The position numbers and the translations under genes are program-made. Below are positions 3,643-48,353 of a stretch of DNA of 63,549 nt, in pieces (position 1 is the first letter of the stretch; every line of letters begins with the position of its first letter). The DNA is from Vitrella brassicaformis CCMP3155 (lineage: Eukaryota; Protista; Chromerida). The stretch is taken from assembly GCA_001179505.1 (NCBI GenBank), contig CDMY01000502.1, positions 1 through 63,549 of the forward strand, given 5' to 3'. The notes beneath the pieces were generated by a model that saw nothing but the letters and a program-made list of their open reading frames with translations, was not told the origin of the DNA and made no database searches.

Positions 3643-3650
3643 AGCTCGCA
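3643..3650 (-). promoter_or_regulatory. TGCGAGCT motif, 82 bp upstream of the ATG at 3560
   Basis: The plus strand reads AGCTCGCA. The same 8-mer recurs at a similar distance before five other start codons. Confidence 0.55.
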
Positions 3651-4436
3651 CGATGCGCTTGAGAAAGGATCTGGCAGATCTCTTCCATAGAAGTGACCAG
3701 CATGCTGCCCTGCATCAGCGGAAGGTCGAGCCGACGCTGAGTGTTGTCATTACACAAAGATCTGCTTCAAATTGTACGGGGCCCGCACCCCGAGTGAGGA
3801 TGGATGCAACACAAAGCCAGTCTGTAACTGTACCGCTACCACATAAACCCATTCACACGGGGACAGCAGAAGGGCAGTACACAGGGCGTGTCCCCTCTTC
3901 TCCGCCCCCACTGGCTCCGCCCATCCACAGGCAGCGGGGAAGAAACCGACACGTACGTCTGGCCGAGTGGCCAATATATGCGGCAGTGCAGTCCACCTGG
4001 CCTCTCTCCCCTTGTCTGTCTGTCTGTCTGTCGTTACATTACGTACTCGTCGAAAAGAGAATGCGGAAAGTCCGTCTTCCTGGCTGCCAGGTAATAGTGC
4101 GTATTCGTCTTCCTGTGCTAAGCTGCCGCAGTCCCTGGTGTCGGTGTGCAAAAGACGGGTAGGGTAGGTGCACCGGGTGCCCGAAGCATGAGCAGGAAAA
4201 ATGCGTGATGGCACACACGTCAGTCGAACTACTCACACGTACATGTGCAGTGAATGCAACTGCATCAACCGTATCCGTTTTCGTGAGTGTACAAATATTT
4301 GCACGTCTGCAGCATGAAGTCACCGAGCGAGTCAACACAGAGCCGCGCACGCAGCCGACAAAAAATGTGTTACAAGCATCAATTAACTCACCAGCATACG
4401 ACGGGCCTGCTGCGTCACCCAGCCACATTCCGAGCA

Positions 4437-4660
4437 TTAGGCGATCTTCACCTTCATCGTGCCAGTCGCAACGTGGGCTCTAGAGTAATGTCTCTGGCGA
4501 ATATAAAATGTAGGCAACGATCCTGACGTTGTCAAGCGCTCGTCGCCGCGGCGATCGTGTAGATGTCGTAAATGGCTACCTGGTGCATGCCCGCCTCCCC
4601 ATTCCTCTCTGACGACGGCCTGCATAGTGGTCAGCTGCCCTCCCTCACACTTGGCCACTA
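4437..4660 (-). pseudogene. Scrambled fragment of the neighbouring kinase-like locus
   Basis: A 25-bp block (4633-4657) is identical to 5519-5543, and a 20-bp block (4586-4605) is identical to 5762-5781, but in a different order. It also carries the 33-bp motif at 4489-4521. Confidence 0.6.
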
Positions 4661-5014
4661 ACAGCCAGGCAAGAAGAAGAAAAAAACGACACATGTGACG
4701 GTTGCCGCCAATACATGTGTCGTTTGGTCATCGACGTGGCTACCCAATATGATGAGCGGCCGACCACGCCACTCGCGCAGAGGACCTCTCTAGTGTGATG
4801 TGTGGTGTGTGGTGTTGTCTTGGCTCTTGTCTGTCTGCTACCCTCTGCGCTACTCGTTGCCCCCCTCTCTGCCCCAAAGCACCAACTGAAGCTATGACCT
4901 TGTCTCTCTCCCGCTCCCTTCCTCCCTCCTCGCTTCTCCCTCCCTCAAAACACGAATGCAACACACACAAGGCGACAGGGGGTCGGATGGTGGTGGTGAT
5001 GGTGATGGTGGGCA

Positions 5015-6580
5015 TCAGAGGGAGACGCCCAGGGCCTCCATCATGGCCTCGTACTCAGCTGACAACACACACACAGACACACAGACAGAGGTGTGTGTTG
5101 TACGGCTTGTATTGTGGTGCCAGTAACGCAATTTTGCAGTCACGTGCGTGCTGTGCTCACTCGGCTCTGGTGTCTGGCAGTAGTCGGGCCACTCCTTGGC
5201 AATGCGCGTCATCTCTGCACACAGCCGAACACACACGGCAGAGATGCACACATGCTTTGTGCAATTGACGGTGCCAAGTGCCTCGACACACCTGTCGTGG
5301 TGTCGTCGCAGTATGAGGCCATCATCTCCCTCAGCTCCTCCGGAGCCACGCCCTGGGCATGCCCCACACACACATCGCGGAACAGGCCAGCCGTCTTCTG
5401 GGCGATCCCGCGGGTGGCCGGTGTCAGCCGCTCGTCGTTGTCGATGCTGGTCAGGGCGCCGGTGTGGATGCTGTGGATGGCCTGGGTGTATGTCTCCTTG
5501 ACGGCCTCCAAGGTGGTGAGCTGCCCTCCCTCACACTTGGCCAGCACGCCCCTGATCTGACCTCTTGCATCCGGGGCCACTGACCCCCCAGCATGGAATC
5601 GTCACAGCAGAGCGGCAGCAGGCAGCACGCCGTGCCGACCAGGTCGCCGTAGTAGTCCACCACTTATCGCGCAGTGCCCGCCCCTCCAAGACCGCCTGCG
5701 TGTTGCCCACAGTGGTGCACGGGGGGCCGAGGCGATTGTTCAGGGCGGACTCGAAGTCAATCATGCCCGCCTCCCCATTCCCCCCGTCCGCCAGCACCAC
5801 ATTTCCCGGGTGACAGTCGTTGTGGGTCGTCTTGGCATCATGAAGTGCCAGGGTGGCTCAAATGGTGTTCACCGCGAGCGTGGGCTTTAGCAGTGGGGCG
5901 GCGGGACGGGGGCGACACACCTGAGTGCACAAGTGCAATACGTACACATTCATGGATGGATTCACAGCGTGTGTATGTATGTATGCATGTAGGTCTCCGC
6001 ACCGTTGCCGACTTTCGTCATGATAAGGCATACCCCGTGCCGACCATCTTCTCGCCGTCCTCGCTGACCACCGGACGGACGGCGGCCGCCAGGACATCAG
6101 GCACGGCACGTGTGCTGCTTGTTGCTGGCTGTGTGCTGCCCAGCTGGGGCACCATCTTCAGGGCCGTGTTGGCATCGGGCAGACGGCCCACCTCGCTCTG
6201 CAGGCTGTTGTACAGCTCACGCACATGGTCCCTGCCCGAGCCTCTCTGGTCATGGGTAATGTACTTCATGACGGCTGCTGTTGTGCTGGCGCCCTTGCAA
6301 AAAAAAAACATAACAAGGGTGAATTCACCCCTGCCGCCGGTGAGTGCCCGCCCACACTCCAACGTCATGCCGTGACCCACCGGCACGACGTCGTCCGCGA
6401 CGATGGTGGGTGGGGGTGGGGGTCCGCTGGACAGCACATTTGAGAATGGGTTGGAGAAGGCGACGGGAGGTGTGGCCTGGGCATCGCTGGGGGGTGAGTC
6501 AAGTGCTTTGGGCCGTGGGGAGTCCTGTGTCGATGACCCGTCCGATGGCTCGCCAACAACCTGTGTGGAAAGGACAACAC
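5015..6580 (-). pseudogene. Disrupted protein-kinase-like gene (K2)
   Basis: It contains a G-rich loop (GRALTGGRGEFTLV), beta3 Lys (AAVMK), hinge (LIMTKVG), catalytic loop HNDCHPGNVVL (D-x4-N), a DFG-like MIDFES and a subdomain IX-like DYYGDLVGTAC. These are split by an in-frame TGA at 5858-5860 and several frame changes (~6025, ~5660, ~5570). Confidence 0.7.
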
Positions 6581-6619
6581 ACAACACATATATGTATGAT
6601 TCCATCTATGTATGATTTG

Positions 6620-10807: not shown

Positions 10808-10832
10808 AGCTCGCAACTGCCGTTTGCAAGCT
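10808..10832. promoter_or_regulatory. Inverted pair AGCTCGCA (10808-15) / TGCAAGCT (10825-32) in the THG1-Myb divergent promoter
   Basis: The exact motif is 96 bp upstream of the THG1 ATG, in THG1 sense. A one-mismatch variant faces the Myb gene. Confidence 0.5.
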
Positions 10833-14889: not shown

Positions 14890-14960
14890 ATCTGAGCTCG
14901 CGGAGTTGTCGTGTCGCTCTTGGCTGGTTGCAGCCGTCCCGTTTGCTCTCTGTCGACAGC

Positions 14961-19282: not shown

Positions 19283-19290
19283 TGCGAGCT
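19283..19290 (+). promoter_or_regulatory. TGCGAGCT motif, 112 bp upstream of the BET1 ATG
   Basis: Exact 8-mer in sense orientation. Confidence 0.55.
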
Positions 19291-19909: not shown

Positions 19910-20209
19910 NNNNNNNNNNNNNNNNNNNNNNNNNNNNNNNNNNNNNNNNNNNNNNNNNNNNNNNNNNNNNNNNNNNNNNNNNNNNNNNNNNNNNNNNNNN
20001 NNNNNNNNNNNNNNNNNNNNNNNNNNNNNNNNNNNNNNNNNNNNNNNNNNNNNNNNNNNNNNNNNNNNNNNNNNNNNNNNNNNNNNNNNNNNNNNNNNNN
20101 NNNNNNNNNNNNNNNNNNNNNNNNNNNNNNNNNNNNNNNNNNNNNNNNNNNNNNNNNNNNNNNNNNNNNNNNNNNNNNNNNNNNNNNNNNNNNNNNNNNN
20201 NNNNNNNNN
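19910..20209. other. Assembly gap (300 N)
   Basis: Run of exactly 300 N. Confidence 0.99.
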
Positions 20210-20740: not shown

Positions 20741-21147
20741 GCATCACATCATGTGGCATCCCATGTTTGGCGCGGCTGCACCCGACGTCCCTCACCTAAC
20801 TCAACAGCGCTCTGCAGCACGCTGCTGTGAGGGGTGAAGGGCTGTGACTTCAGCCACAACCAAAACAGAGATGACGATGAATGTGGCGTCCCTAAACATC
20901 TCTCAGCACGCCACGAGCCTGACTGACAAACCCTCTCCGAGCTCGCAGCAAGTCAGCCATATGTATCGTAGACATCATGTGGGGTCGCCTGTCCGCCTGT
21001 CGGATAGTTGCGACGTGCCCGGCGGACGGACCAACCAAAGAGCACATACACACTTTGGTTGAGGCGTTCCCGGTTCGCGCGACAACTCTCCGACAGACAG
21101 ACAGACAGACAGACCCACGATCGAATGATGGACCTAGTGAGCACGAC

Positions 21148-22354: not shown

Positions 22355-22589
22355 CCTTGGTGCCGCTCAAAGCTACTGTACAAAATACAATAGATCACTG
22401 AGTCTGCCGTTGCTCCCTTGTCATTCTCGCTACTCTGATGGCCTTTGGACGCTTTGAGGGACCGTTTGCCTTCTGCTCCGGAGGTCGGAGCTAAGCCCGC
22501 AGGTGCCAAACGGAGTAAGGCTTCTTCGCAGCATCCAAGCTTTGTTGAAGGCTGGGAGGGCTCAGGACAGGCAAGATTTGCAGGCTCCA

Positions 22590-23467
22590 ATGGAGGGCTT
22601 TGACCAGAAACGCTATCGCGGCGGCGGCACGGCGGGTGGCGGCAAGAAGGGCGGATACGGAGGACTCACATACGTCAAGCAAGGTGAGAGGACAGCAAGC
22701 ATGACGCTCATGAGACCGAAGACAGTTCACTCGTCTGTCTGCTTGTCTGGTTCTCTGTGTGTCTGCAGTTCCCAAATTCCTGCAGAAGTACTATGACCAG
22801 CACCCAGAGCTTGCCGTGAGCGAGAAGCATCAGAAGACCGTCTCACAGAGGACGCCAAATGAGTCGCGCGAGGAGGAAATGGCGCACATGCTCAAGGTAC
22901 CGCTGACGCGCCAGGCTGCAACCGGATGCTGTGGAGGACACTGGCCAGATGGTCCCGCCTCTTTGTGTGTGTCAGGATCTCGAGTCGGCCCAGATTGTCG
23001 ACAGCAGCGTCACCCTCGACGACCTCAAGAAGCAGCACGCCCTGCAGTCACACAAGGACGCACGAGCCCACCAGACATGCGACGTCAAGTCACTCGAGGC
23101 CGAGGGCAAGTTCGTCTTCAAGAAACCAACCGCCGCCAGCTCGCGACCAGACAAGGACCACCATCCGTCAGCGCGCCGAGGGAGGGCAGAGAGGGATCAT
23201 CCGTCGTCGCGCGGCGGCAGAAGTGAGGAGCCGTCAAGGCACCGCGGTCGGAGCCGAAGTCGGAGCCGCAGCAGAGAGCGGTTCAGGGAGACCTCGCGCG
23301 AGCGAGACGACCGTAGATGGAGGGAAGACAGTGAGAGGGAGAGGGGTAGGGGGGATGACGACAGGGGGCGGTCGGGGAGGGGTAGGGTAGATAAGGACAG
23401 AGCCAGCGAGGCGAAGGAGGGGAGGAAGGGGGCAGCGAAGAATCTGCTGTCTTTTGATGACGACTAG
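22590..23467 (+). CDS. DUF4604 / KIAA1143-like small basic protein
   Basis: It has N-terminal GLTYVKQ|VPKFLQ, central GKFVFKKP, an RS/RE-rich stretch and C-terminal KNLLSFDDD*. Confidence 0.7.
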
Positions 23468-24367
23468 ACAGTCGCGACAGCCGTGCTGTGTGTGAATGCC
23501 ACGCTGCGTTCCACCTGAGGACATTGATGTCTCTTCCGAGTGGGAGTGCGGTCGCAGCTACCGACGTAATGGCACCGCTTTGCCGCGCGGGCGGGATGTT
23601 GATGTCCTCGATGAAGAGCGCATCCATGTATGCTCGATGGATGAATGGACTATGGAGAGAGGCATGTGGGTGGATGGAGAGATGTGGTGGTGTTGTGAAA
23701 ACATGCTGGATTGATGTATGTTGTCGTTCGGTGACGACGAGTCAGCTGCATGGAAGGGTGTTGTGGGCAGCTGCTGTGACACTGATGCTGTTGACTTGAC
23801 CAATGATGCAAGAGTGAGAGTTCCGTTCCACACGTGTGTTGACATATGATGCTGCTGGTCCGTCCGTCGTCCAGCCATGGCCGCAGTGTGTGGTGCACTC
23901 ACCGGCACACCCAGCAGCACCCAGCAGACACACCAGTGTGCCAGTCGCCACATGTGCCATGTGCCTGCCTGTTTGTTTGGGGCATCTATAGCAAAACCGG
24001 TGCTGTGTTGCACTGGGGGGATGAAGCTGTCAAAATCTTGAGACGTACAAAACCATTGATCGACACGTCCTTGACAAAACAAGCCGGTCCACGGACCCGC
24101 GGCATTATGCACAAACGACGACACGGAGGCAGGCAGGAGACAGAAGGCCGAGTCACAAGGCAGCATGGACAGCGGAGTTTCCTCCTCCTCCCGCACCACA
24201 AAAAAAGCAGCTTTTCTTATACAGTAGACATGGGTAATGCTGTCGCTCTGAGGTATGAGCGACAGCAACACCCACGTAACGTCAACCGAATGGCAAAGCT
24301 GCTAAGCTCAGCTGCTCAAGGGCAGAGAAGGGAGAGACGAGGGCCACTCACCCACCCACCCACCCAC

Positions 24368-29863: not shown

Positions 29864-29971
29864 CGTCCCATGAGGGGCTCACTGCCGACAGACGGTCAAA
29901 GATACCACTGATTTGACAGTAGATCTGCCTGCCTCACTCACAAGGGAGGATCTCAGGCGCCACTTGTGAAC

Positions 29972-29994
29972 TGCGAGCTTAGCTTTGGCGAGCT
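29972..29994 (+). promoter_or_regulatory. TGCGAGCT (29972-79) plus a GGCGAGCT variant in the divergent region between TMEM181 and the ATG at 30081
   Basis: Sequence TGCGAGCTTAGCTTTGGCGAGCT. The exact motif is 101 bp before the ATG at 30081. Confidence 0.5.
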
Positions 29995-30080
29995 TGGAGC
30001 CAAACGCAGTGAATCGAACCACCACCACCATGCAATGTCTTTTGCGGAGGAACCAATCCAAAGACGTGCAGCAAGGCGAG

Positions 30081-30130
30081 ATGGCCGACAACGACCAGAT
30101 CTTGGCGCTTTTTAAGTCGATTGGCCTGCC
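30081..30130 (+). pseudogene. Orphan first exon resembling the N-terminus of eukaryotic glutaminyl-tRNA synthetase
   Basis: MADNDQILALFKSIGL resembles the GlnRS N-terminal helix (L.LF..(I/L)GL). No downstream GlnRS exons could be found. Confidence 0.25.
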
Positions 30131-31582
30131 CTGGGCTCTCGTGGCATCACAAGCCAGGCTTGTGTGGCATCTTATGCATGCGGCATCGTTTTCGGCTGGC
30201 TGCATGCATCATTTGCTTGCTGTCCAGGTTGGTACCAGCCGACCTCCGCTGCGCCGCCTGCCAGCATCGCATCCTTGTGAACCGATGGCGTCCATGACGC
30301 GGGCTCTGATGGTGACGGTGGGGATGAGGGTGCAGCAGGAGCACCGAGGTCATGGAAAATCTCATGCCCATGGCCGTTGAAGAAATACAAACACGTAGGC
30401 ACGTATAGATCGACGAGAGGGTGAATGGTCGGTGTGGTCGGTGTGGTGTGTGGACAACTGGACCACCTGGCTATCGTTGAAGGTCCACCCTGAGACCATC
30501 CCCTTTGCAGAAGACAGATACGACTCGAGTGAGCCACACCAAAAATGAGGCAACGCACACTCACATTCCCCTGTGAAATCTCTGCTTGTGTGTGTGTGAT
30601 AGGGAGGAGTGTTGGATCGGCGACGACGCTCAACTACGCCCTGAAGGAGCCTGGCTCAACATACGACAGTCTACTGACTTACATAATGCCAACCGGCCAC
30701 TCAAGGCTATCCACTGGTCAGAACGGTCGGCCGAATTGGGATAGGGAGGAGGGCATCCCATGGATGTCGCTACAGACAGCTGCAAGCGAGGTTTCGTGCA
30801 GGCAGGCAGGCAGGCAGCGTGTGTGTCGTCTTGTACATATCTTTATATGCATCTGGGGGTGCCTTATATGTGTTGTCTAGGTAGGTAGGTATGCAGCCAT
30901 CTTAAGGGAACGCAAGTATGTGTATGAGTGGGTGGGTTTGTGGGTGCATTTGTGCATCGTGCACGTGGGACGCACGCATTAAATCATCTCAATGGTGCGT
31001 CCGAATACACACACGCAACACCAACAACCACCCACCAGTCGTGCAACCAGTAGCTCGACTCGACGCATTCACCAACACGCCCCTTTCGCTGTGCTGTCCA
31101 TGTGTCTGTCGCCATGCCTACATCATGAAACCTAGCTCAGCTGATAAACGCACAGATGCACTCACGCACGGACACAAGCATACAAGGCCGTGCATGCAGA
31201 TGGACACCTACTGAACTCTAGCATGACGCAAAAGCCACACCACCCCTCCCATGACATATTCTAGGATGTCTACATATGTCTACATGTCGCTCGCTCTTTG
31301 ACGCACTGCACGCCGCCACACGCTCGGGGCGCCTGCCCGCCTCGGGGCAGCAGAGAGCCCAGGCAGCCATGCAGAGAGCCGAAGAGCAACACAAGGAACG
31401 CATCCTTGAGGCATGAGATGTCACCTCAGGACGATATGGGTAGAGGGGGAGCCCTCCCCCATCATTGCATGCAGCGTGTATGCAACAGGCAGCGGAAGGG
31501 AAGCATCAAGCATCAATAAACCAACTTCACGCCCCCCAACATGCAGACAGAGGACGCGTCCATGAGTGTGTCCGCCACATCC

Positions 31583-34500
31583 CTACGCCGCCTGGCTCGC
31601 CTTCTCTTTCTTCTCCTTCTTCCCTCCCCCTCCCCGCCCCCCTCCCTCCCCGTCCCCACTTTTGGTCGCCGGGCGGGTCATCTCTAGGGTGACGCCGTCC
31701 ACCACCGACACAGCAAACTTGCCCTGGGCCATGTCACGCAAAATGCGCGGAAAAGAAAACCGTGGCCTCACACGCAGCACCAGCACCACTCGCTGCAGCA
31801 AAGGGAAGCTGTCGAGTGCCATGCCGACCCTCTGTGCCAGCGTGCGGCACATGGTCCTGGCCTCGGCGGCCGAGAGGCCCTGGACCGTCCGGCCATATCT
31901 GAGTGTGGTCAACTCTATCTGCAGTGTCCTGACTCGCCTCTCCATCACCTGTCTGCCCCGATCCCCCACACCGTACATACGCCACTCAACGCGCTTTTCC
32001 CCCTGGCCGGCGGCCAGATCGACACGCCACCCCACCACCACACGCAGAGGGCTGCCTTTGACAGAGAGCAGCGAGACTGGCTCAGGCACCAGGAAGAGGC
32101 TAGTAGTGGGGGCGGCAAGGGCCCTCAAGTTGAAGGTGACGGACGACAGTGAAGGCAGCTTTCCCAGCACTGTGTCCGCCCCTCCCAGGTAGAAGAACAT
32201 CTGCCCATCCCCCTGCTCAGCCACGACCGTCTCGACGTTAGGGAAGAGCGCGGCGGGGTTGGCCGTGATGTACGAGGGGAGGTAGTTCCAGGGGGCGTTG
32301 ACGGCGCCGGCGATCGTCAGCTTGGTGGCACTCCCGCACACCAGCGAGCTGAGCTGCTGCTGGTGCGGCTGGAGTGTGTTGGCCCACGGGAGTACCGTCA
32401 CTGAGGCTGCCTGTGCAAAAGCAGCTTGATGGTGGGGAGGCATAAGGGCAGCTCGGTGGGGTCGCCGGCGAAGGGCAGCCGCACGGACAGGCCCTTCTTG
32501 GCTAGGTCGACCGGCCTCTGGATGTCCAGGGCGCCCCAGTACACCTCGGTGGCACCCGGGGCCAGGCAGGTGGCCCTGAACCGATCGAGCGCCTGAAGAA
32601 TGAACAAAGAAGCAAAGCGGACAAGAGGCTGTTGTGTGGGTGGGTGGGAAACTAGCTAGCAGTGGGTCAGACGTCCTTTCTTGTTTGTTACCCCACCTTG
32701 ATGAATGAAACGGAGCGCACGTCGTCGTCGCCGAGCTCGGCGAGGCACATCTCGATCTTCTGCAGGCGGCCGCTGCCGGTGGGTGAGCGGAACAGGTTGA
32801 TGAAGGCGTCCAGGTTCACCCCTTGAAACCGACCACGACCCGTCAGCGAACGGAGAGTCTTGGCTGCAGACAAAAGGGAAGCAGTGTATCTGTTGTGTTG
32901 TGTCTGTTGTCCGTTCTGTCTGTGGCCGCGGCTTTCTGACCTGATGCAGTGAACATGAGGGAGTCGACAATGTCTATCAGGTTGACGTCAGAGCGGCAGC
33001 CCAGCTCACGCTGCAGCCATGCCATGCGGCCAGGCAGGTGCACCGAGGTGCTGTGTTGCGTATGGTGTGCATGTCTAAGTGAGTGTGGATAGGCGCTGAC
33101 CTCGAACGGAATGTGGAGGGATCGGAGGCCGTTCCTGGCGCGACTGATGAACGACCGAGGGCCAGACGCCGTCAGATCCACCACATCCTGTGTCAACGAT
33201 GCGCAAACATGGCAGACAGACAGTGCGCGACCCACAGGTGCACTCACTAATGTGATGTGATGCGACCTACCAGTGCTGTCAGTGCCGGCAGCTGCATGTT
33301 TCTGTCAGCCGCCATGTTGCTCCACCCGCCACGCACAACCGCCGTTGCCAGAAGGGGGTACTCCACCGGAAACTGGCAACAGCACACGTCGACATACACA
33401 CCCTTTTCCCGCCCCACTCCGCTGCGTACCCGGTTGTGTGGCATCTTCATGTGGTGTCTGCCGCGCAGGATCCGGCCGCCCTCCTGGTGGCCGTTGGCAT
33501 AGCCCCGCAAGTCCACCCTACGAAAAGATGGCGCCACTGCCTCCAGCAGCCGCACCAACGCCACAGTCGGACGGTGATCAACCTTCAACTCACGGCACTC
33601 CAACAGCCGACCTGAAAGGCGCGCACGCAGACACGCACACAAACACGCACACAAGGGCAGCAGAGTCACGGCAATGACAAGGGGAGTAAGACAAGCTCCT
33701 CCCTCCCTCCCTCCCTCCCTCCTTGTTTCCCGCCTACCGTGCCAGGTCTTGGCGACTTTCTCACGTGGCGGCATGCTGATGTGGGCGATTGGGTGCATGC
33801 TGCTGTTTGTGGTGAGATGGTGAAAGTAGGTGCTGACGCACGAGAGGGACTCAATGGACGACGGGAAACCCAGATGACCGCCTAAGAAGGTCAAACCAGA
33901 CCGGTGAAAGGAATGTGAACGGTGAAAGGAATGTGGTCAGTTGCTCGTCTCCCCGTACCGATGCCGATGCGGTGGTCGTCGCTCAGCCAGAGAGCCTCCG
34001 GCAGTCCCTCCAGACACGCACAGTAACCCTGTCACACACATACACACACACATACAGACAACAATATGGGGACCTGACACGCAGCGGCGTGGATGTGTGT
34101 GTGGGTTACCCCCTCGTCGTTGAGTTTGTGCATCTTCCCCTCCAGTATGTCGAATTTCTTGTTGGCCTGCTCGAGCTGCTCCATCGCCGACTCGGCATTG
34201 TCGATCTGCCTGTGGGCGTCCTGTAGCACCATCGACCCCATGACACGGTAGTGACGATCCAGCTCCTGATTCAAAGGCAAAGAGGCAAACTTGGCAGAGG
34301 GATGGGCTGTGTAGGCAGGTGGGCAGGTACCTGCGTACGCTGCTGCTGTAGGTCTGTGTCGGGCGGCGGGAGATTCTCCCTCATCTCGTACACGTGTTTG
34401 GCCTGAAGATCGATCACAACACCAACCACATTCACACCCACACCTACACCGCTTCAAACGGTCTGCCTATACGGCCTTTGGTCATCTCACTCCCTCACTG

Positions 34501-35150
34501 ACCCGCTGTTTGGTCTGTTGAAGTCTTTGCATGAGTGTCTGCAGCTTCTCGCCCATCGTGTCGAGAGTCGATAGCACAGTATCTGGACACACATCTGCTA
34601 CATCCTGCAGACACAAGCACATACCAGAGAGAGGCAACACAACAGCAGAAAGGAATTGCATTGCGTCCATCGATCGCATCACCAACTATCCCCTTCCTCT
34701 TGCAAGGTGTACCTGCATCTCAACGTCGGCTTGCTCATCTACAGCTCCCTCCACTTCGTCACCCTCCGCATCTTCCTCTCCCTCGTCACTATCGGCTGCT
34801 GGTGCTGCTGCCTCCAAATTGGCTGCCACGCCCGTGCGTGTGCCATCCTTGTGGTTCCTGTCCTTGCCCGCACCACGCCGCCCCTTCCCACTCCTCGCCG
34901 CGCGACGGTCCTCCCAGTCCGACCACCCCGATGAGCTGCTGCTGTCTTCCTCCATGGCCTCCTCATTCTCTGACTCTTCCTGCCGCTCGTCAGCCATCTC
35001 ATCCTCGCGCCCCTGCTGACTGTCCTCGTCGTGTTCATCTGTGGTTTTGCGCTTGTGCTTCTTCGGTCGGGGGCGGACAACAGAAGCAGAGGCCGCCTCG
35101 GCTGCCACGGCAGCTTTGCGTTTGGGGGGACGCCTGTCCATCATCGCCAC
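31583..35150 (-). CDS. Acidic/basic N-terminus + coiled coil + F-box-like motif + LRR-like C-terminus; one apparent frameshift
   Basis: Exons splice in frame: MAMMDRRPPKRK...VEMQ|DVADV...|AKHVYEM...|ELDRHY...NDEG|GYCACLEGLPEALWLSDDHRIGI|GGHLGFPSSIESLSCVSTYFHHL...|GRLLECRELKVDHRP... The reading frame shifts at ~32420 (LPTIKL / FAQAASVTVLP). Confidence 0.7.
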
Positions 35151-35178
35151 ATTACTCGACTCACGCGGCTCAGCGCGG

Positions 35179-35211
35179 CTCCCTCCTGCGAGCTAAGCTT
35201 GCAGGAGGGAG
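35179..35211. promoter_or_regulatory. 33-bp near-perfect palindrome in a 150-bp bidirectional promoter
   Basis: CTCCCTCCTGCGAGCT-A-AGCTTGCAGGAGGGAG has 16-bp arms with one mismatch. It contains TGCGAGCT and its inverted variant AGCTTGCA. Confidence 0.7.
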
Positions 35212-35302
35212 GTAAACACTGCACTGGGAGGCGTTCGGCCCTCCAAAGGGTATCCCGAATCATCCCGCATTCACATTGTTGTCAGTGCTTGAGCGTGTAG
35301 CG

Positions 35303-37019
35303 ATGGCAGGCCCCTGGTGCGGTCTCACATTCTGTCTTCTCATCCTTCTCGCGCAGAGTCCGTTCTGCGCTGCCTGGCTCGATGACGTACGTAAGCGCCC
35401 AAGCCAATTGAGAGAGCCCATCGGTTGGCGCGAATGAGAGTGCAATGTGTGTGTGTGTGTGACACTTTGTGTCAGGGTCACATGCTGGTCGGGGGAATCG
35501 CCAAATACGTCATGACTCATCAGATGGACGGCGGCAAGACAGCTGTTGAGGCACTGGAGGCTGTATTGAGAGGATGGGAGTATCAATACCCTGGTCTTTC
35601 GTCTCTCGTGACGGCTCCCATCTGGCCTGACCATATCAAGTGCACGAAAGACGTTGGGCACTGCCGCGGCGGATGGCGGCATGAAGGCCTCCGGGTGGGT
35701 GACAACAGTGGCACAACGGCCAGCCGCATACACGTAGACACCTGGTGCCTGCCTGCCACACGCAGGTATTCGACGCCTGGCATTCTATCAACGTCCCCCT
35801 CAATCCTCTCGATGTGGCCCTTCCTGAGAACGTACACGAGAGCATCAACGCGCAGTGGCTTCTGGAGCATGCCAACAAGACGCTGATGGAGCTAGGCCGG
35901 AAGCAGGACAAGGGAACGATTTTCAGCTGGAACTTCATGCTGCGGTGTGTGACGTCTGTTGCGGGGGGAATGATGCATACTTTCGCCCTTTCTCTCTGCT
36001 TGTTTGTGTGCTTGCAGGTTTCTGATGCACGTGTATCGGGACATTCACCAGCCCCTTCACGCCTGCACACTTTACAACAGCCAATTCGCAAACGGGGATA
36101 AAGGCGGCAACGATGTATGTAGGAAGGCAGCCACATTTCGTCCATGCCGCACGCTTGGCGTATTGACGCATTTGGCTCGTAGGTCAAGATAAAAGTCGCT
36201 ATCGGTGAGGGCATGGGGTATAGCCCACCGAGCTTGCACACATTGTGGGATGCCGCTGGCGGCCCTCTGCAACGACTATGGCCCCAACACACAGAAGAAG
36301 ACGTGCTCTGTGAGGTGCGCACGTATACATGCAGAGACAGATGGAACAACACAATGGCGGCCGTCTGGCCTTGCAGGCGCTCGAACATAAGGACCACATA
36401 CGGCAGGCCATGGCGTCTCCCGAAGCGAGAATACTCGACTTTAAGGACATCATTGCCGAGTCGCACCAGTTTTGCGAGCAACACGTCTACACAGGTGCAA
36501 AGGCACATGAGTCGACACAGACATCCTACCGATTCCTATGTTTCATTGTCTGCATTTGTGCGCGGAATAGAGTTTCTGAAAACCGACGGGGCACTGCCGT
36601 ATCAGCCGAGCGATGACTACATCCACCAGACGGCCGCCATATCATATGGCCGCATCATCATCGCGGGCGTCCGGCTCGCCCAGCTCCTCATGCCCATCGC
36701 CGACAACGCGATATCCATGCAGGCAAGGGAAACACCACAAAAAACGCCAGAACCCGTGGAGGAGCCACAAAACGCTGCTGATGCTGAGACCACCGCATTA
36801 TTGGGTGTCGACGAGGACGGAGCGGCCATGTGGAAGGCCATGTGTGGGCTGCTGGTGCTGGCCGTGCTTTGTCTGAGTGTGATGGTGGCGTGGCTGGGAT
36901 GGCGGCAGGCGTGGTGTGTGCGTGAGGCGAGGCTCAAGGCAGAAATGCTCAACATCATCCAGATGGCGGCAGCCAGGCCAGACAGGAATGTTGGTGCTTT
37001 ACAGGCGATAGACAGATAG
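35303..37019 (+). CDS. S1/P1 (class I) nuclease with signal peptide and C-terminal TM anchor
   Basis: The signal peptide is followed by WLDD|GHMLV, WPDHIK, DAWH, FLMHVYRDIHQPLH, GDKGGN, LHTLWD, ESH and AGVRLAQLL. The zinc-ligand positions appear present, and there is a hydrophobic helix near the C-terminus. Confidence 0.93.
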
Positions 37020-37271
37020 ACAAATGGATGCAAGTGCTTTAAGACCTTCTCACTTGTGGCCACCCTGACAATACACGCATCAGTGGTTCTCCACGCTTTG
37101 TCCTCCAAATCACTTGCCGATTGCGGCAGTTCAAGATCCATGCCGAGCGGTGTCTGGCCAAAGCGTCATAAGCAGAATGCGATGAGTTCCACCCATCTCT
37201 TTTTGCGATCGCTCGCTCGCTTAGCTCGCAGTGGAGGTCTCGTTAAACACAATAACCAACCAACCAGTCTA

Positions 37272-38078
37272 ATGGCTAAGAACGGGGGCCGCATGCTGAA
37301 GTACCACAAACTAGGGTACTCAAAGCACAGAAAAGCCCAGATCTATCACCGTGTCATGGTTGCGGCTGCTGTTCCAATGTCATGTGGGAGCAAATGGAGC
37401 GACATTCAGGTGTCAGAGCTGTGTCTGGGCACCATGACCTGGGGCGAGCAAAACACAGAGGCCGAAGCGCACGCCCAGCTCGACTACTTCGAGAGCGTTG
37501 GCGGTACGTTCATCGATACGGTAAGGTGATTGATGATCTGCTGCCTATGTGCAATGACACAGAATGTGCAATGACACAGAGATCCAGATCTGGCAAGCAC
37601 TGGCTGGGTGCCTTTGTGCTGTGTTGGTGCAGGCTGAGATGTATCCGGTGCCGCCCCGGACGGAGATCCTTGGCCGCACGGAAACCTACCTCGGGCGATG
37701 GCTCAAGGGCAAGGACAGGAGCAAGTTCATCATCGCCAGCAAAGTGCCCGGATACGCCGATAGGGAGTGGATCAAGCCGTGAGCTGTTGGGCGGATGGGG
37801 GGATGGCGGGAAGGATGTGCACTCTCATTCCTGCTGTGATGGTGATGTTTGTTGGTGTGTCGTGTCAGGAAGCGTGTTCCGCCGATGGAGATGGATGGGA
37901 CGCCTGTGCGGCCCAGCCCCGACCAGATGCAGCGGTCGATAGCCACCATCCTCCATCGCCTGCAGACTGACTATGTCGACATACTCTACATTCACTGGCC
38001 AGACAGGTATCGGAACCATTCCATACAGAGGAGGAGGCCAACAAGCGTGTCAAAAGAATATGCATGTGTCTGTGCGCA

Positions 38079-38118
<40 letters not shown>

Positions 38119-41760: not shown

Positions 41761-42146
41761 CCACCAGCCCACGAGCTCAGCGCTATTCCGTGCCAACTAT
41801 CCCGCCCTTTGTGCGTCGTCGTTTGAACCTCTGGTTGACGGCCACTTCCCCAGGGGCCTCATTTCCGCACCCACCATTGCCGAGCATCACGTGCACGACA
41901 TCTCCCACCAGCCCACGAGCTCAGCGCTATTCCGTGCCAGCTATCCCGCCCTTTGTGCGTCGTCGTTTGAACCTCTGGTTGACGGCCACTTCCCCAGGGG
42001 CCTCATTTCCGCACCCACCATTGCCGAGCATCACGTGCACGACATCTCCCACCAGCCCACGAGCTCAGCGCTATTCCGTGCCAACTTTCCCGCCCTTTGT
42101 GCGTCGTCGTTTGACCCTCTGGCTGACGGCCACTTCCCCAGGGGCA
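41735..42146. repeat. 144-bp tandem repeat, ~2.9 copies
   Basis: Units start at 41735, 41879 and 42023 (GCCGAGCATCACGTGCACGAC...) and differ by only a few substitutions. Confidence 0.95.
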
Positions 42147-42345
42147 TCACTTATGTGCACTCTATATGTCAAGGGTTGATGATCTATGACGGACTCGGTG
42201 GGTGGTCGGACAGAGGGTTACATTTGGTATGCTTGCAGTGATTGAATGGAAGGGACAGCTAGCTAGTTTTTAGTTTGCATTCTTGATGGACTCCTCGTGC
42301 TGACGCGCTTTCCGTTAATCCCGTGCTTTATCAATGCATGTTGTC

Positions 42346-45300
42346 ACCGGTGTGCGTCGAGCCCAATGAATCTTTTTGGGTATGCACGGACGAATGCATC
42401 AAAGAACAACCCAACACGAAAGCCCCATTGCAGAGACGGAGCAGACAGATCGCCTGCAATCTCAGCTCGCAGACGTCTGGCTGCCAGGGGAGAAACTTAT
42501 CCGAGTCTTCGCGTAAAGGGTGGGTGGCCGCGTGAAGGTGACGAGCACAGATCGACCAGCAAATAGCAGCCGGGTGAGGCCATCTCCACAGCACAGCACT
42601 CTCTCAGGTCAGTCACACGAGCACACACCCAAGGAATGGCCAGACTGACTGACCGGTGCTGTTGTGTTGTGTGTGTAGGTTTGCTGCCTCTTCGGCGTCT
42701 TCGAAGGCGCTTTCAGCGAAGCATTTTTTGAGAATGGATGTCAGCAGCAGCAGTGGAGCTGCGACGACGCTTGCTGTGGCCAAAGAAGTGCTTGAGGTGA
42801 GTGAGAGTAAGAAGTGGCTCCCAGACATCTGATGATGACGGATCAGCTGTCTGACCTGCTGTGTGTGTGTGTGTGTGGCGGGGGTGTTTCCAGGGATGGA
42901 TGGCCCACACGAGTCAGTGCTGCGGCCCGGAGTGCGATGGGAGCAACTTTTTGTGGCGTCCGGGCATGGACATCTTCCAATCCAAGAGCTTCTACGACCC
43001 AAGGCTCAAAGACGCGGGCTCCTTCATCATCTCCTTCGTGAAATTCCATTGGTCGCACGGCAAGCGGCTCAACGAGAGCGGCAACATCGTCGTGTTTGTT
43101 GGTCACTCCTTGAAGGCCCAGCTCGAAGCGGCCAAGTCACGGCACCCGCACGTGGACTCTGATGAGGTGCTGGCGGCGGTCAAGCAGCTGCTCAAGCAAC
43201 AGCCGGGCCATACCCTCAGCCGCTTCATGGCCGTTACAGAAATGGTCGAGCAGACGACTGCACCAACGGACGGCGGCGTGGTGGTGAGGAGGGAGTGTGG
43301 GGATGAATGAGCTTTGTCACTTGTTGGTTCGTATATCTCCTGCCTGTGTTGTTTGTTATGGCTTTTAGTCAGTCGGGGCGGTACTTTTTCCAAACGAATT
43401 CTTTTCCCGGCTCGGCCTGGACTCCTCAGGAATGCCCAATCCGCTGCACGTCCGGCTCATGTCTGAGTTCAACGGCTTCAAGAGCTCCGTCCTCTTCACA
43501 GGCGCCATGGCCACACGGGCGTACGAGCTGGTCATCCGTCAGGCCAGCTGCTTCGAGGGAGCGACCATGCTGGCGGCCTTATGGGCGGCCATGCAGGGCG
43601 AGAACAAGCAGAAGCGATCAGTGCACTGGGAGCTGGACCACGACTGGAACGACGAGTTTCGCATCAAGGAAATCACCACGGTAGGTACTCGACTCGACTG
43701 CTGCACTGCAGACATGCACCATGCTGTGTGTGTGGGCCAATCAAGGTGATTTCAATTATCATCCACCATACGTTCAACATGCTCAAAGAGTGAGTGTGTG
43801 AGTGGGGGAGCGACGCGGCACGACTTGCACACCTGTGTGTGGTGCCTGCCTGTTGTGTGTGCAGGGATCCGCCCGAGGGAGCGTTGGCCAAGCACTACAA
43901 GAACGTCATCCTGGTGTGTGTCCAGGCAGGGAGGGAGGGAGGGAGGGAGGCAGCACACAGCAACCTTGGTGGCCAAGCCCAATGTATGCCTGTTTGGCTG
44001 CCTGCAGGTGTACATGAGGCTCATAGACGTCATCAACTGGCCCTCCATGTGGAAGAAATTGCAGCGAAACAAGATCATATTCGACGGCAGTCCCTTTGCC
44101 TCACTCACTCCTGAGATCAACGCGGTGAGAAAGACGTCGCACATCACCACGCACTGAAAGCTCGTGTCCGTCTGTATGAACGCAGAACAAGGCTAATGGT
44201 GAGGCCTTCTGCGTCAAGCACCCTGGCTCCCATGAGAGCACTTTCCTGCTGCGATCCTGCGAGGCCGTCAGCCGCCACAAGGACCTTTTCGCCCCTCTGC
44301 AGCGCAGCACAGCACCGGCCATCGAAGAAGCAGGACTCACGAAGACAGTCATCTACCACATCAACGACAAACCACCACGGAGCAGCACCACCACCAGCAG
44401 CAGCGGCAGCAGCGGCAGGGCGACGGGCATATTGCGGTCGAAGGACCTCGCCTTCTCCACGGACCTGTTTGAGACGCACCGGAGATGTTATGACCTGCTC
44501 ATGAAGCGAGACGGCGCCACGACGGGCGAGCTGGTCAAAGAGGAGCGACGGCTGGAGGGCAAGAGGCTGGCGCAGCTGGAGGCGGACGCACAGCGACACA
44601 TGGATGAGCTGCTGGAGTGGGAGAACACAGGCAAGAAGCCCGGCAAACAGGACACTGCTGGCAAGAGCGAGGCCAAGCCAGCGACCGCCGGCAAGAAGCA
44701 CAACAAGAAGGGCAGGGAGGGGAACGTCGGGCCGTCAGTGCCCCCGTCATCGGATCGACTGACGAGTAGGCAGATCAGATGGCGACGGAGGCGACACAAG
44801 ACGAGCTTTGATGCAGGCAGCACTGTGCGTTTGATTTTCTTACGTGATGATGCAGGTCTTCTGACGGGAGTGCTGGGGCATGTGCTGCTGCTGCCGCTGC
44901 TGCTGCTGGCCAGCCTGGGGAGTCTTCTACGGCGCCACATGACATACTCCCAGCCCCCGCGGAGATCGATGAACCGTAAGCCCCACACAGGAGACAGATG
45001 CATCGCGTCGGAACATATCGCTTTCTGTCTGTCTGTCTGTCTGTCTGTCGTGTGTGCGTGTTGGTGTTCCAGCATCGCAGAGGCGCCCCCTGCCTGACCT
45101 GCCAGTGCCGCAGCGACTCCCGCGTCGACCAGGTGGGCATTCGATCCGCCGCTCGCCATGTACATATCTCTGTCTGTCTGAATATCTATCTCTCTGTCTG
45201 TCTGTACGCACAGCTGTGACGTGCCGTCGAGCGACTCTGCGTCAGCGGCAGAGGATATCCTCCCCAGCGTCTCAGATGCGCTTCGCATCGAGACGGAGAA

Positions 45301-46075: not shown

Positions 46076-46343
46076 GAAGGATGGAATGGCCGGATATCAC
46101 AGGCACGTGGTATTCGATGTGTTTTTTCTCTGTGTTCTTCGCTCTATGCTGCTAGATGGTGCATGTGTGTGTGTGTATTTGTATTTGTTTATGACTGGCT
46201 CGGGCGAATGGCTTTCAGATTTGAAAATATATATATATATTGCTGGTCTCATCCAGACTGTCACGATGCCGCCGACAAGCGACACATACAAAAGACCTGG
46301 TGCACAGAGTTCTCTCGTCTCCAATAGATAGCACTCATCCCAG

Positions 46344-48264
46344 TCAGTGCCTGCAAGGGCTGTCATGCTCGTCAAAAGACCGAAACCTCACCAAGCCCTC
46401 CTGGATCACTCTTAACCACGACCTATCCCTGAGCACGTCAATGCGGAATGCATCAGGCAGCGACGGCGGGTGAGAGGGGGCAGGTGCAGCTGCCGCCCAC
46501 TGCTTGCCGTCCCACCGCACTGTCTGCGGCACGAAGAAGGAGAGATACCACTCGCCGCCATCCCACCTGCAATGCAGACACACAGATGTGATAACATACC
46601 TGTAGGAGCATTTTTCCTCTCCCACACTTACGTTAGGTTGAGGGCAGGTTGGTCGTGGCCACTCTCCTTCTGCAAGGGCCTCAATGTGACGAAGAATGGC
46701 TGTGGCTGTGGCTTCCTCAGCTCGGCGCCGATGAGGCGCTGTATCTCTACCAGCGGCACGTCGAACGGCCGGAAGGGCGGCGAAGTGGGCGAGGGGGCCG
46801 TCCACCGAGGCGGACAGATCCACAATGCCGCCTCAAGACCAACCTGCAGCCACAAACCACGCATCCACGTGTGCATATGACTGGCTCAGTCCGTCGGTGC
46901 TCACCTCATCGAGATATCTGCGAATGTCGGGCCTGTAGTACTCAGCGAGGTCGACTTGAAAGCTCCTCAGCGACGTGAGATTGGTCTCCATGACGCGATA
47001 GCTCTGCCCCGCCCCGCTCCACCCGAGCATGCCCACATTCCTCGCCAGCGGCAGCAGAGTGTTGGGCCGCCCGCCCTCGCTCCGCAGGTTGGAAAACATG
47101 GCAAGCGCCGGATAGGTCCGCAGACCGAGGTACGGGCTCAGACCCCAGAACCACACAATGCCACTCGACAGCCTGGTAACCCACGACAGGCTTCTTGGCT
47201 CCTTGGCAGCCCTCTTTGCTGATGGAGGGGGGGAGGGAATGGGGGAGGGGGCGACGATGAGGGCAGCGAGCTGACAGATAGACACCGTCACGACCCAGGT
47301 CACTCCCACAGGAAATAAGTTGTAGTTGGGATACTCGAAGTAAGGCCCTTTCGGCACGAACGCATAGACGATCGCAGCCACAGCAGCACCAACCGCCAGG
47401 GCCACATAGCCGCCCCCGAGCCTCTCCATGGCCCTCTCGAACACACGCGGCCGCACCAGCACATAAAAGCACATCATGCAGATGGAGAAGGGATAGAAGG
47501 ACGCAGGCGGGGGCGGCACGGCGAGGAAGATGTGAAATCCCAGGCCCATCAGCATGCCGATTTCTCGAGAGCGCTCGAACCAGAAGCATGCAGAGATGGC
47601 CGTCTCGCCGATGAGGGCGCCCCAGTGCGCGTGACGCAGCATGAACTTGACGACAGACGAGTGGATCAAGGAAGCGGGCAGGTACTGCTTGACCACGATA
47701 GCCAGCACCTGGTTAGCACAGCTCCTGCGGGCCACCAGGAAGTCGGTGTTGAACTTGTGCAGAGCGGCCACCGTGTACAGCGATGCCATCTGGTAGCCCA
47801 GCACGTGGGCCAGCTCCCTCTGCATGTCCTTTCGCCGTTTCTTGTTCGTCATGCCGAGCACCACCACAGCAACCACAGAGGCAGCGAAGCACATCTCTGT
47901 TAGGATGTGGTTTGACAGCGGGCCGAGAACAAAGTCGTAGACGAGGGAGAGCGCCGTGCTGGCCAATAAGAGGGGCAGCCGGGACGGCAGCACCAGCAGG
48001 GAAGCGTTGACAAGGGCCACACAGAGGGGAATGATGCGATGCAGATCCACAAAAGGAACACGGGTCACTGCCAGACACACAGACCGACACACACACGGGC
48101 ATCATGAAGCATGCAGATTCGTGCTCATTACCTCCGTTGGCAGCCACTGCTGCGTGCAGTGCAGCACTGGGCGTCAGATCTTTCACCACGTGCAGCAGCT
48201 GGGTGGACGCCCATAAGAAGGCGAACACAGCGAGGCCATCCGTCGATTTCATCACTGCAGGCAT
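46344..48264 (-). CDS. HTTM-domain (vitamin K-dependent carboxylase-like) multipass membrane protein, bacterial type
   Basis: Motifs: YQMASLYTVAALHKFNTDFL...SCA, WGALIGE...GMLMGLGFHIFL, FYPFS, PYLGLRTYPALAMFSNLRSEGG and C-terminal LVRFRSF...CRH. About 10 hydrophobic segments are visible. Confidence 0.75.
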
Positions 48265-48345
48265 CACGCAGCAGCCAGGAGGCGACACACGAAGCCAAAA
48301 CAGTCCGAAGAAAGCTCCCTTTCCTCCCTCCCTCAACAACATGAA

Positions 48346-48353
48346 AGCTCGCA
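48346..48353 (-). promoter_or_regulatory. TGCGAGCT motif, 81 bp upstream of the HTTM ATG, inside a 190-bp bidirectional promoter
   Basis: The plus strand reads AGCTCGCA. Confidence 0.55.

What the first reader, a model, noticed from the sequence alone, without database searches (positions are those of the whole stretch)
3643..48353. Candidate core-promoter element TGCGAGCT at a fixed distance upstream of start codons
Seen: by eye I found nine exact TGCGAGCT/AGCTCGCA sites (3643, 10808, 19283, 20940, 29972, 35187, 37223, 42464, 48346). Six are in sense orientation 82, 96, 112, 101, 108 and 81 bp before an ATG (LRR-like gene, THG1, BET1, the 30081 exon, S1/P1 nuclease, HTTM). Two more lie in 5' flanks (41 bp before the AKR ATG in antisense; the divergent region near 42.4 kb). 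Only 20940 is unexplained. None was noticed in a confidently called exon; 42464 falls in the uncertain first exon of the 42346 model. Near-variants occur before PP2C (14895 AGCTCGCG) and in the mL43/DUF4604 promoter (22486 CGGAGCTAAGC). The motif is often extended as TGCGAGCT(A/T)AGC. A rough composition estimate gives about 2-3 chance hits in this window, with no positional preference. Inference: a positioned, orientation-biased housekeeping promoter element. It differs from the TGCATGCA and GAGACG-type motifs known from apicomplexans, and I do not know it to be described. The four secreted-protein genes at 50-62 kb appear to lack it.
Basis: partly seen in the sequence, partly recalled or inferred. 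Interest (0 to 1): 0.82.

Follow-up and report, generated by a model that had tools for sequence, protein, structure and literature searches.

The report
Shared promoter word of Vitrella genes
The eight-letter DNA word TGCGAGCT/AGCTCGCA really does mark the short gaps where genes start in the alga Vitrella brassicaformis (a free-living relative of malaria parasites), so it is most likely an undescribed protein-binding site of promoters, many of them shared by two genes.

Summary
Observation confirmed.

- **Source:** the window is the whole scaffold CDMY01000502.1 of Vitrella brassicaformis CCMP3155.
- **Count:** all nine exact TGCGAGCT/AGCTCGCA copies exist. The count alone is unremarkable (9 against about 3.3 expected).
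- **Placement:** this is the real signal. None lies in an NCBI gene range, though these cover 69% of the annotated span. Seven lie within 300 bp upstream of annotated start codons. In an unbiased scan of all 18,964 8-mers it ranks first or second for upstream enrichment (Bonferroni p about 0.005). All four annotated head-to-head spacers carry a copy.
- **Form:** the element is often half of a dyad, TGCGAGCT-N-AGCTYGCA.
- **RNA evidence:** at 35187-35203 the RNA contigs of two divergent genes end 7 nt outside each half-site. A third mRNA (AKR) starts 57 nt downstream of its copy. The word is therefore untranscribed and close to the transcription start.
- **Not established:** a fixed distance to the ATG and an orientation bias. 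The 81-112 bp values are mostly 5'UTR length. Site 20940 lies between two gene ends and may be a chance copy.
- **Literature:** I found no paper describing the motif.
- **Earlier in this scan:** the same word was already noted many times on other Vitrella pieces, with at least four follow-ups. This report is a replication with added geometry.
- **Not tested:** conservation in Chromera.

The parts
35187..35203 (.). Best site: the near-perfect dyad TGCGAGCT-A-AGCTTGCA. It lies in the 161-bp spacer between the start codons of the 838-aa gene (-, ATG 35141) and the S1/P1 nuclease (+, ATG 35303). It is the core of a 33-bp palindrome spanning 35179-35211.
   Evidence: 1 mismatch to the 17-mer dyad; annotation; sequence
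35179..35179 (-). 5' end of the RNA contigs of the minus-strand 838-aa gene. It is 7 nt outside the left half-site and gives a 38-nt 5'UTR.
   Evidence: X7 record 10 and X8 record 12, from two different studies, both end at 35179
35211..35211 (+). 5' end of the S1/P1 nuclease mRNA contig. It is 7 nt outside the right half-site and gives a 92-nt 5'UTR.
   Evidence: L002 = Logan ERR558152 contig, CDS from base 93; L002 starts at window 35211
37223..37230 (-). Exact copy (the + strand reads AGCTCGCA) in the tandem spacer between the nuclease 3' end (37119) and the AKR gene. The adjacent half CGCTCGCT makes it a 3-mismatch dyad (37214-37230).
37288..37288 (+). Common 5' end of the AKR mRNA contigs in three runs. 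It is 57 nt after the motif and 16 nt downstream of the annotated ATG at 37272.
   Evidence: X1 record 4, X7, X8 record 13
10808..10815 (-). Exact copy in the 340-bp head-to-head spacer between THG1 (-, ATG 10711, 96 bp away) and the Myb-like gene (+, ATG 11052, 236 bp away). An inverted TGCAAGCT lies at 10825.
   Evidence: ([13 protein letters not shown]..., a typical Thg1 N-terminus)
19283..19290 (+). Exact copy in the 356-bp head-to-head spacer between the 198-aa gene (-, ATG 19016, 266 bp away) and the 163-aa BET1-like gene (+, ATG 19373, 82 bp away).
29972..29979 (+). Exact copy 108 bp upstream of the ATG (29863) of the WLS-like gene (-). A second GCGAGCTT lies 15 bp further on (29988). 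The plus-strand ORF at 30081 is not annotated.
42455..42471 (.). Dyad TGCAATCT-C-AGCTCGCA (2 mismatches) in the 990-bp head-to-head spacer between the 336-aa gene (-, ATG 41743) and the 758-aa gene (+, ATG 42734, 262 bp away).
48346..48353 (-). Exact copy 81 bp upstream of the inferred ATG of the HTTM-domain gene (-). A presequence-like ORF starts 104 bp away on the other strand; its annotation was not seen.
3643..3650 (-). Exact copy in a stretch with no NCBI gene (1052-5014). It lies 82 bp before the ATG of a 106-codon ORF that has a hydrophobic N-terminus. This may be an unannotated gene.
   Evidence: no Pfam hit
20940..20947 (-). Exact copy in the tail-to-tail gap between the 3' ends of two convergent genes (20550 and 21148). 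It is either a chance copy or the promoter of something unannotated.
   Evidence: no Rfam or tRNA hit
22485..22501 (.). Degenerate dyad TCGGAGCTAAGCCCGCA (3 mismatches), 131 bp upstream of the ATG of the 240-aa gene (-, 22354).
14895..14902 (-). One-mismatch copy (the + strand reads AGCTCGCG), 58 bp upstream of the PP2C ATG (14961).

Best explanation
AGCTCGCA/TGCGAGCT is the half-site of a sequence-specific, probably dimeric, DNA-binding factor. Its full form is the dyad TGCGAGCT-N-AGCTYGCA. The factor would occupy the untranscribed core or proximal region of TATA-less Pol II promoters in Vitrella brassicaformis. It sits in the short gap between two divergent transcription starts, or 10-60 bp upstream of a single start. 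From there it would help to recruit the initiation machinery, often in both directions.

Shown here: the placement, the enrichment, the dyad symmetry and the exclusion from mRNA. Inferred: protein binding and a role in initiation.
For: 1. Upstream enrichment. Seven of nine copies fall in the 300-bp zones, which are 7% of the span (p 2.6e-7, Bonferroni 0.005). AGCTCGC tops the 7-mers and GCGAGC the 6-mers. The word is absent or unenriched in 3' zones.
2. Gene bodies avoided. None of the 8 sites in the annotated span lies in a gene range, although these cover 69% of it (p 9e-5).
3. Head-to-head spacers. All four annotated head-to-head spacers (1,847 bp) hold an exact copy against 0.09 expected (p 3e-6).
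4. Dyad. The 17-mer dyad with 3 or fewer mismatches occurs 4 times against 0.30 in shuffles, and all four are in promoter spacers.
5. RNA ends. Spliced RNA contigs from two studies end at 35179 and 35211, 7 nt outside each half-site and +/-16 nt from the dyad centre. AKR contigs start 57 nt after the 37223 copy. The word is not in the mRNA at any of the three 5' ends.
6. Not a repeat. The flanks of the nine copies share nothing beyond a weak T-W before and G after the core.
7. Lead only. First readers of other pieces of this genome noted the same word independently (25 notes hold AGCTCGCA, 21 hold GCGAGCT with promoter, and the two lists may overlap; at least four follow-ups).
Against: - There is no binding or functional data.
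- Only three 5' ends could be examined, and they come from assembled contigs, not 5'-specific reads. Motif-to-start spacing is 7, 7 and 57 nt, so it is not one fixed distance.
- The raw count in the window is not significant after multiple testing.
- One copy (20940) lies between two 3' ends.
- Two copies (3643, and the plus side of 29972) face ORFs that NCBI does not annotate and Pfam does not recognise.
- About a third of annotated genes here lack an exact copy within 300 bp.
Confidence: 0.8

Rival explanations
1. A non-transcriptional chromatin element of intergenic DNA, such as an insulator or boundary site, a nucleosome-excluding sequence or a replication-origin element. It would coincide with promoters only because those are the open regions.
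For: The evidence is positional only. Spacing to RNA 5' ends varies between 7 and 57 nt. One copy lies in a 3'-3' gap.
Against: The word is not enriched in 3' intergenic zones. It sits exactly midway between two divergent 5' ends. It is shared by all annotated head-to-head spacers.
Confidence: 0.08
2. An RNA-level signal in the 5' leader, such as a TOP-like translational or stability element, positioned relative to the start codon as the reader's 81-112 bp cluster suggests.
For: Among TGCGAGCT-oriented cases, distances to the ATG cluster at 81-108 bp for four annotated genes.
Against: RNA contigs begin downstream of the word at all three 5' ends examined. The element is a DNA dyad that serves both strands. 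In the other orientation, distances run from 41 to 266 bp.
Confidence: 0.05
3. Chance plus pattern-seeking: an 8-mer picked after the fact, with ATGs that are found downstream of any site.
For: The count of 9 against about 3.3 ranks only 582nd of 22,208 8-mers. One-mismatch variants are not enriched. An ATG lies within 100 bp of almost any position.
Against: The word takes top rank in an unbiased scan against an independent annotation, with Bonferroni p 0.005. THG1 and the nuclease start codons are backed by homology and RNA evidence. The dyad partners are unexpected by chance.
Confidence: 0.03
4. A passive footprint with no function, such as the remnant of a dispersed repeat or a composition effect of CpG-rich promoter DNA.
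For: Promoter zones differ in composition from gene bodies.
Against: The flanks of the nine copies are unrelated. All 8-mers of similar composition were tested and none matches it.
Confidence: 0.04

Closest known systems
gCATGCa motif of Toxoplasma gondii promoters (Markus et al. 2021, PMC7854901). It resembles the TGCATGCA site of the Plasmodium ApiAP2 PF14_0633.
   Same: Both are short, palindrome-like words present at a large share of promoters in a relative of the same lineage (44% of Toxoplasma TSS windows; 10 of 15 annotated genes here). Both are untranscribed, lie upstream of the start and have no known cognate factor.
   Different: The sequence differs (GAGCT/AGCTCGCA core, no CATGCA). 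The Toxoplasma motif peaks about 82 nt upstream of the TSS, whereas this one is 7-57 nt from RNA 5' ends. Here it lies between very closely spaced divergent starts.
Dyad-symmetric activator sites of TATA-less, often bidirectional, housekeeping promoters in animals: NRF1 (GCGCATGCGC) and the Drosophila DRE (TATCGATA, bound by DREF). These are recalled from general knowledge and were not tested here.
   Same: They work alike: a palindromic site close to the start, in promoters without a TATA box, often shared by divergent genes.
   Different: The sequences are unrelated. No NRF1 or DREF orthologue was sought. This is a resemblance in mode of action only.
Canonical core-promoter elements (TATA box, Inr).
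   Same: Located within the core-promoter interval.
   Different: It is not AT-rich, does not overlap the start as an Inr does, and is dyad-symmetric. Spacing to the start is not fixed in the three cases seen.

Membership tests
Apicomplexan gCATGCa/TGCATGCA promoter motif | Core sequence CATGCA | tested here: not met
   All nine sites read TGCGAGCT/AGCTCGCA. CATGCA-type words are not among the top upstream-enriched k-mers.
Apicomplexan gCATGCa/TGCATGCA promoter motif | Peak about 82 nt upstream of the TSS, in the nucleosome-depleted region (PMC7854901) | tested here: inconclusive
   Here the spacing to RNA contig 5' ends is 7, 7 and 57 nt. There are only three cases and no 5'-specific reads.
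Apicomplexan gCATGCa/TGCATGCA promoter motif | Present at a large fraction of promoters regardless of regulation | tested here: met
   10 of 15 annotated genes with known starts have an exact copy within 300 bp upstream of the ATG.
Canonical core promoter elements (TATA, Inr) | TATA-like sequence at about -30, or an element overlapping the start site | tested here: not met
   The word is GC-rich and lies wholly upstream of the three RNA 5' ends.
Dyad-symmetric activator site of bidirectional TATA-less promoters (works like NRF1 or DRE) | Palindromic site lying between divergent starts | tested here: met
   The 17-mer dyad with 3 or fewer mismatches occurs 4 times against 0.30 expected, always in promoter spacers. 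At 35187-35203 the two 5' ends lie +/-16 nt from the centre.
Dyad-symmetric activator site of bidirectional TATA-less promoters (works like NRF1 or DRE) | Bound by a dimeric sequence-specific factor that activates transcription | not testable with these tools
   This needs EMSA, DAP-seq or PBM, plus reporter assays.
Dispersed repeat or MITE | Copies share extended flanking homology | tested here: not met
   Information content of the flanks is near zero beyond positions -2 and +1. The flanks are printed.
5'-terminal RNA motif (TOP-like) | The motif lies in the transcript, at or near its 5' end | tested here: not met
   Contigs start 7, 7 and 57 nt downstream of the word.

The most novel reading that the evidence does not exclude
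The dyad TGCGAGCT-N-AGCTCGCA is the principal start-site selector of Vitrella Pol II promoters. A single lineage-specific dimeric factor, for instance an ApiAP2 or Myb-type protein, would replace TATA and Inr. It would set initiation symmetrically about 16 bp either side of its centre for most genes, and it would have been inherited from, or lost in, the ancestor of apicomplexan parasites.
Probability: 0.25. Interest if true: 0.72.

Novelty: new member of a known kind. Interest (0 to 1): 0.5.

Why it matters
- **First cis-element for a chromerid.** Vitrella is one of the two cultured photosynthetic relatives of Apicomplexa, and I found no described promoter element for it. The genome paper notes only an excess of head-to-head gene pairs (PMC4501334).
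- **Practical use.** A dominant, easily scanned promoter word would help to place gene starts and to find missing genes. Two sites here face unannotated ORFs. It would also help to design expression cassettes.
- **Evolutionary question.** It makes testable whether the apicomplexan promoter code (gCATGCa and ApiAP2 sites) arose before or after the split from chromerids.
- **Limit.** The kind of thing, a start-proximal transcription-factor site, is ordinary, and the scan has already reported this word from many other pieces of the same genome.

Tried and rejected
1. Count-based significance. Nine copies against about 3.3 expected is not significant once all 8-mers are considered, so I dropped it in favour of placement tests.
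2. Literature. Searches for the raw 8-mer return only primers. Searches on Vitrella or Chromera promoters, ApiAP2 motifs and the C. parvum ApiAP2 paper show no such motif.
3. Getting gene models. The HTTM ORF search did not return the window's own protein. An exact look-up of the Myb ORF failed. Queries with the S1/P1 and Myb ORFs then gave P0006 and P0007 and the NCBI gene ranges for 1052-22576 and 25303-47019. The stretches 22577-25302 and 47020-63549 stayed unannotated.
4. Metagenome scan for the 17-mer dyad. It gave 53 single hits, with no extra copies nearby (0.13 per 10 kb). This is chance level and shows no environmental relatives.
5. RNA genes. Rfam and tRNA scans, run to explain 20940 and 3643 as RNA-gene promoters, found nothing.
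6. Pfam on the unannotated ORFs beside 3643, 29972 and 48346 found nothing.
7. Orientation rule. I considered 'AGCTCGCA points at the start 8 nt away' and rejected it as general, because AKR starts 57 nt away.
8. I did not run the large representative-protein search to reach Chromera loci.


Full report
**Source and annotation.** A word search with an ORF of the S1/P1 nuclease returned one protein, from Vitrella brassicaformis CCMP3155, on a contig of exactly 63,549 bp. Looking that protein up shows that the window is the whole scaffold CDMY01000502.1 of assembly GCA_001179505.1. Two look-ups gave the NCBI gene ranges for window 1052-22576 and 25303-47019. That is fifteen genes with known start codons, all of them with introns. 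The stretches 22577-25302 and 47020-63549 were not seen.

**The observation.** reproduces all nine exact TGCGAGCT/AGCTCGCA sites.
- Shuffles expect 3.25 +/- 1.74, and one shuffle in 100 reaches nine.
- Among all 22,208 canonical 8-mers, the word ranks only 582nd by over-representation. The top of that list is microsatellites.
- One-mismatch variants are, if anything, fewer than expected.
- So the count is no evidence on its own.
- NCBI places the same start codons for THG1 (96 bp), the S1/P1 nuclease (108) and AKR (41). The HTTM model runs off the fetched locus, so its start (81) is inferred.
- NCBI starts the BET1-like gene at 82 rather than 112.
- NCBI annotates no gene for the 'LRR-like' ORF at 3560 or the '30081 exon'.
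- The THG1 start is convincing on its own ([13 protein letters not shown]...; Thg1 domains in downstream exons). So is the nuclease start, which has a signal peptide ending at the mature Trp.

**Assembly gaps.** All three are 300-N placeholders whose flanks do not overlap. No site lies within 600 bp of a gap. Only the model of the 163-aa gene that spans 19910-20209, and therefore the reading of site 20940, depends on one.

**Placement is the real signal.**
- None of the eight sites inside the annotated span falls in a gene range, although gene ranges make up 69% of it (p about 9e-5).
- I tested every 8-mer for enrichment in the zones upstream of annotated ATGs. AGCTCGCA or its overlapping neighbour AAGCTCGC ranks first or second of 18,964 at zone sizes of 120, 150, 200, 300 and 500 bp.
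- Seven of the nine copies lie in the 300-bp zones, which are 7% of the sequence (p 2.6e-7, Bonferroni 0.005).
- AGCTCGC heads the 7-mers (Bonferroni 0.002) and GCGAGC the 6-mers.
- Zones downstream of stop codons show only microsatellites, and the word is absent or unenriched there.
- Each of the four annotated head-to-head spacers (THG1/Myb, 198-aa/163-aa, 838-aa/nuclease, 336-aa/758-aa; 1,847 bp in all) holds an exact copy against 0.09 expected (p 3e-6).
- Ten of the fifteen genes with known starts have an exact copy within 300 bp of the ATG.
- PP2C has a one-mismatch copy at -58, and the 240-aa gene has a degenerate dyad at -131.

**Form of the element.**
- At 35187-35203 the sequence is TGCGAGCT-A-AGCTTGCA.
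- At 42455-42471 it is TGCAATCT-C-AGCTCGCA.
- Weaker dyads lie at 37214 and 22485.
- Matches to the 17-mer dyad with three or fewer mismatches number four against 0.30 in shuffles, and all four are in promoter spacers.
- At 29972 two direct GCGAGCTT copies lie 15 bp apart. At 10808 an inverted TGCAAGCT lies 9 bp away.
- Outside the core, the nine copies share only a weak T-W before and G after AGCTCGCA. They are therefore not copies of a repeat.

**Relation to transcripts.** Four public runs that hold the stretch 32001-38000 all give spliced contigs with GT..AG or CT..AC joints, so they are RNA.
- The contig of the minus-strand 838-aa gene ends at 35179 in two runs from different studies.
- The nuclease contig, fetched as L002 from ERR558152 with 92 nt of leader, starts at 35211.
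- The two ends lie 7 nt outside the two half-sites, +/-16 nt from the dyad centre at 35195. They are also the outer bases of a 33-bp palindrome (CTCCCTCC-dyad-GGAGGGAG).
- The arms are 16 nt long, too short to break a k=31 graph, so I read these ends as coverage ends, meaning real 5' ends or close to them.
- AKR contigs in three runs begin at 37288, 57 nt after AGCTCGCA (37223-37230).
- A one-mismatch copy inside an exon (32343) has no contig end beside it.
- The word is therefore untranscribed and start-proximal, but the spacing is not one fixed number.
- These are assembled contigs, not 5'-specific reads, and only three ends could be examined.

- 'Promoter element' holds.
- 'Fixed distance upstream of start codons' does not. 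Distances to annotated ATGs are 41, 45, 81, 82, 96, 108, 108, 236, 262, 266 and 720 bp. The 81-112 cluster is what one gets from a start just beyond the word plus a leader of 65-95 nt.
- 'Orientation-biased' is not established. Most sites serve genes on both sides. TGCGAGCT points at the nearer annotated gene four times (THG1, 163-aa gene, nuclease, HTTM). AGCTCGCA does so three times (838-aa gene, AKR, WLS-like).
- 'Secreted-protein genes lack it' fails for the nuclease, which has a signal peptide and carries the best site. No copy in the last 15 kb against about 2 expected is not significant.
- Site 20940 lies between the 3' ends of two convergent genes. With about three chance copies expected per window, it may simply be one of them. 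No Rfam family or tRNA lies beside it.

**Mechanism.** I commit to a DNA-level reading. The word is the half-site of a sequence-specific, probably dimeric, factor that binds the untranscribed gap of TATA-less promoters and promotes initiation, often in both directions.
- Shown: position, enrichment, dyad symmetry and exclusion from mRNA.
- Inferred: binding and function.
- Rivals are a chromatin or boundary element, a leader RNA signal, chance, and a passive footprint. They are listed with their evidence, and together I give them about 0.2.

**Comparison with what is known.**
- The closest described case in the lineage is the gCATGCa motif of Toxoplasma. It is present in 44% of TSS windows, peaks about 82 nt upstream, and has no known factor (PMC7854901). 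The sequence and the spacing differ.
- By mode of action it resembles dyad sites of animal TATA-less bidirectional promoters, such as NRF1 and DRE/DREF. This is from general knowledge and was not tested.
- The chromerid genome paper mentions no promoter motif, only an excess of head-to-head pairs (PMC4501334).
- Other searches found nothing. The library searched is incomplete, so 'undescribed' is provisional.

**Earlier scan notes.** The same word has been noted many times on other pieces of this genome: 25 notes hold AGCTCGCA and 21 hold GCGAGCT with promoter, and the two lists may overlap. At least four were followed up and reached the same reading. These are unchecked AI notes. I use them as a sign that the pattern recurs, not as proof. 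This report adds four things:
- the unbiased ranking against NCBI models;
- the dyad statistics;
- the +/-16 geometry at one site and the 57-nt counter-example;
- the correction of the ATG-distance and orientation claims.

**Dead ends.**
- A metagenome scan for the 17-mer dyad gave 53 single, chance-level hits with no further copies nearby.
- Pfam did not recognise the unannotated ORFs beside sites 3643, 29972 and 48346.
- Conservation in Chromera could not be tested.

Noticed in passing
window 37231-37410: AKR mRNA contigs in three runs start at 37288, downstream of the annotated ATG at 37272. With the RNA-supported intron (about 37316-37409) removed, the upstream ATGs open only a 23-codon uORF, and the AKR frame starts at the Met of LGTMTWGE. 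With the intron retained (one contig), ATG 37272 is in frame and adds a 45-aa N-terminal extension. This may mean two isoforms, or a mis-set start codon.
   Followed up: partly
window 37237-37268: A segment of about 30 nt (GTCTCGTTAAACACAATAACCAACCAACCAGT) is matched exactly by very deep RNA contigs (depth 168-1300). These contigs carry unrelated sequence on both sides, with at least three different continuations. So the segment is shared with highly expressed transcripts from elsewhere in the genome. There is one copy on this scaffold and no Rfam match. Its nature is unknown.
   Followed up: partly
within 40 bp of the nine motif sites: The word AGATC occurs 8 times against 1.2 expected (p 3e-5, about 0.016 after correction for 512 5-mers). 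In four sites GATC lies 12-16 nt after TGCGAGCT, about where the nuclease mRNA starts relative to its copy. It may be a second promoter word or an initiator.
   Followed up: partly
300-bp zones upstream of annotated ATGs: Other words lean towards upstream zones but do not survive correction: CGTGCAC/GTGCACG (7 of 15), GATTGGCC (CCAAT-like, 3 of 4) and GCAAACGG (3 of 4).
   Followed up: no
window 35179-35211: The dyad is the core of a 33-bp palindrome (CTCCCTCC TGCGAGCT A AGCTTGCA GGAGGGAG, 15 of 16 arm positions paired). Its outermost bases are exactly the two RNA contig ends.
   Followed up: yes
window 41771-42200: Three tandem copies of a 144-bp unit lie in the 990-bp spacer between the 336-aa and 758-aa genes. 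The stretch stays open in one frame, as a repeated 48-aa peptide, but is not annotated as coding.
   Followed up: no
window 1281-5014 and 29864-31582: Two stretches have no NCBI gene, yet each has a motif site facing an ORF that starts with ATG (3560 minus strand, 30081 plus strand). They are candidates for missed genes. Pfam finds nothing.
   Followed up: partly
window 48458-48565: An ORF that starts 104 bp from site 48346 on the plus strand reads like a mitochondrial presequence (MLSLIRSSRFVAVPATRLLRPFAS...). It may be a divergent partner of the HTTM gene. I did not see the annotation of this part.
   Followed up: no
window 53231-55188, minus strand: Three consecutive long ORFs include a subtilase (Peptidase_S8) segment.
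   Followed up: no
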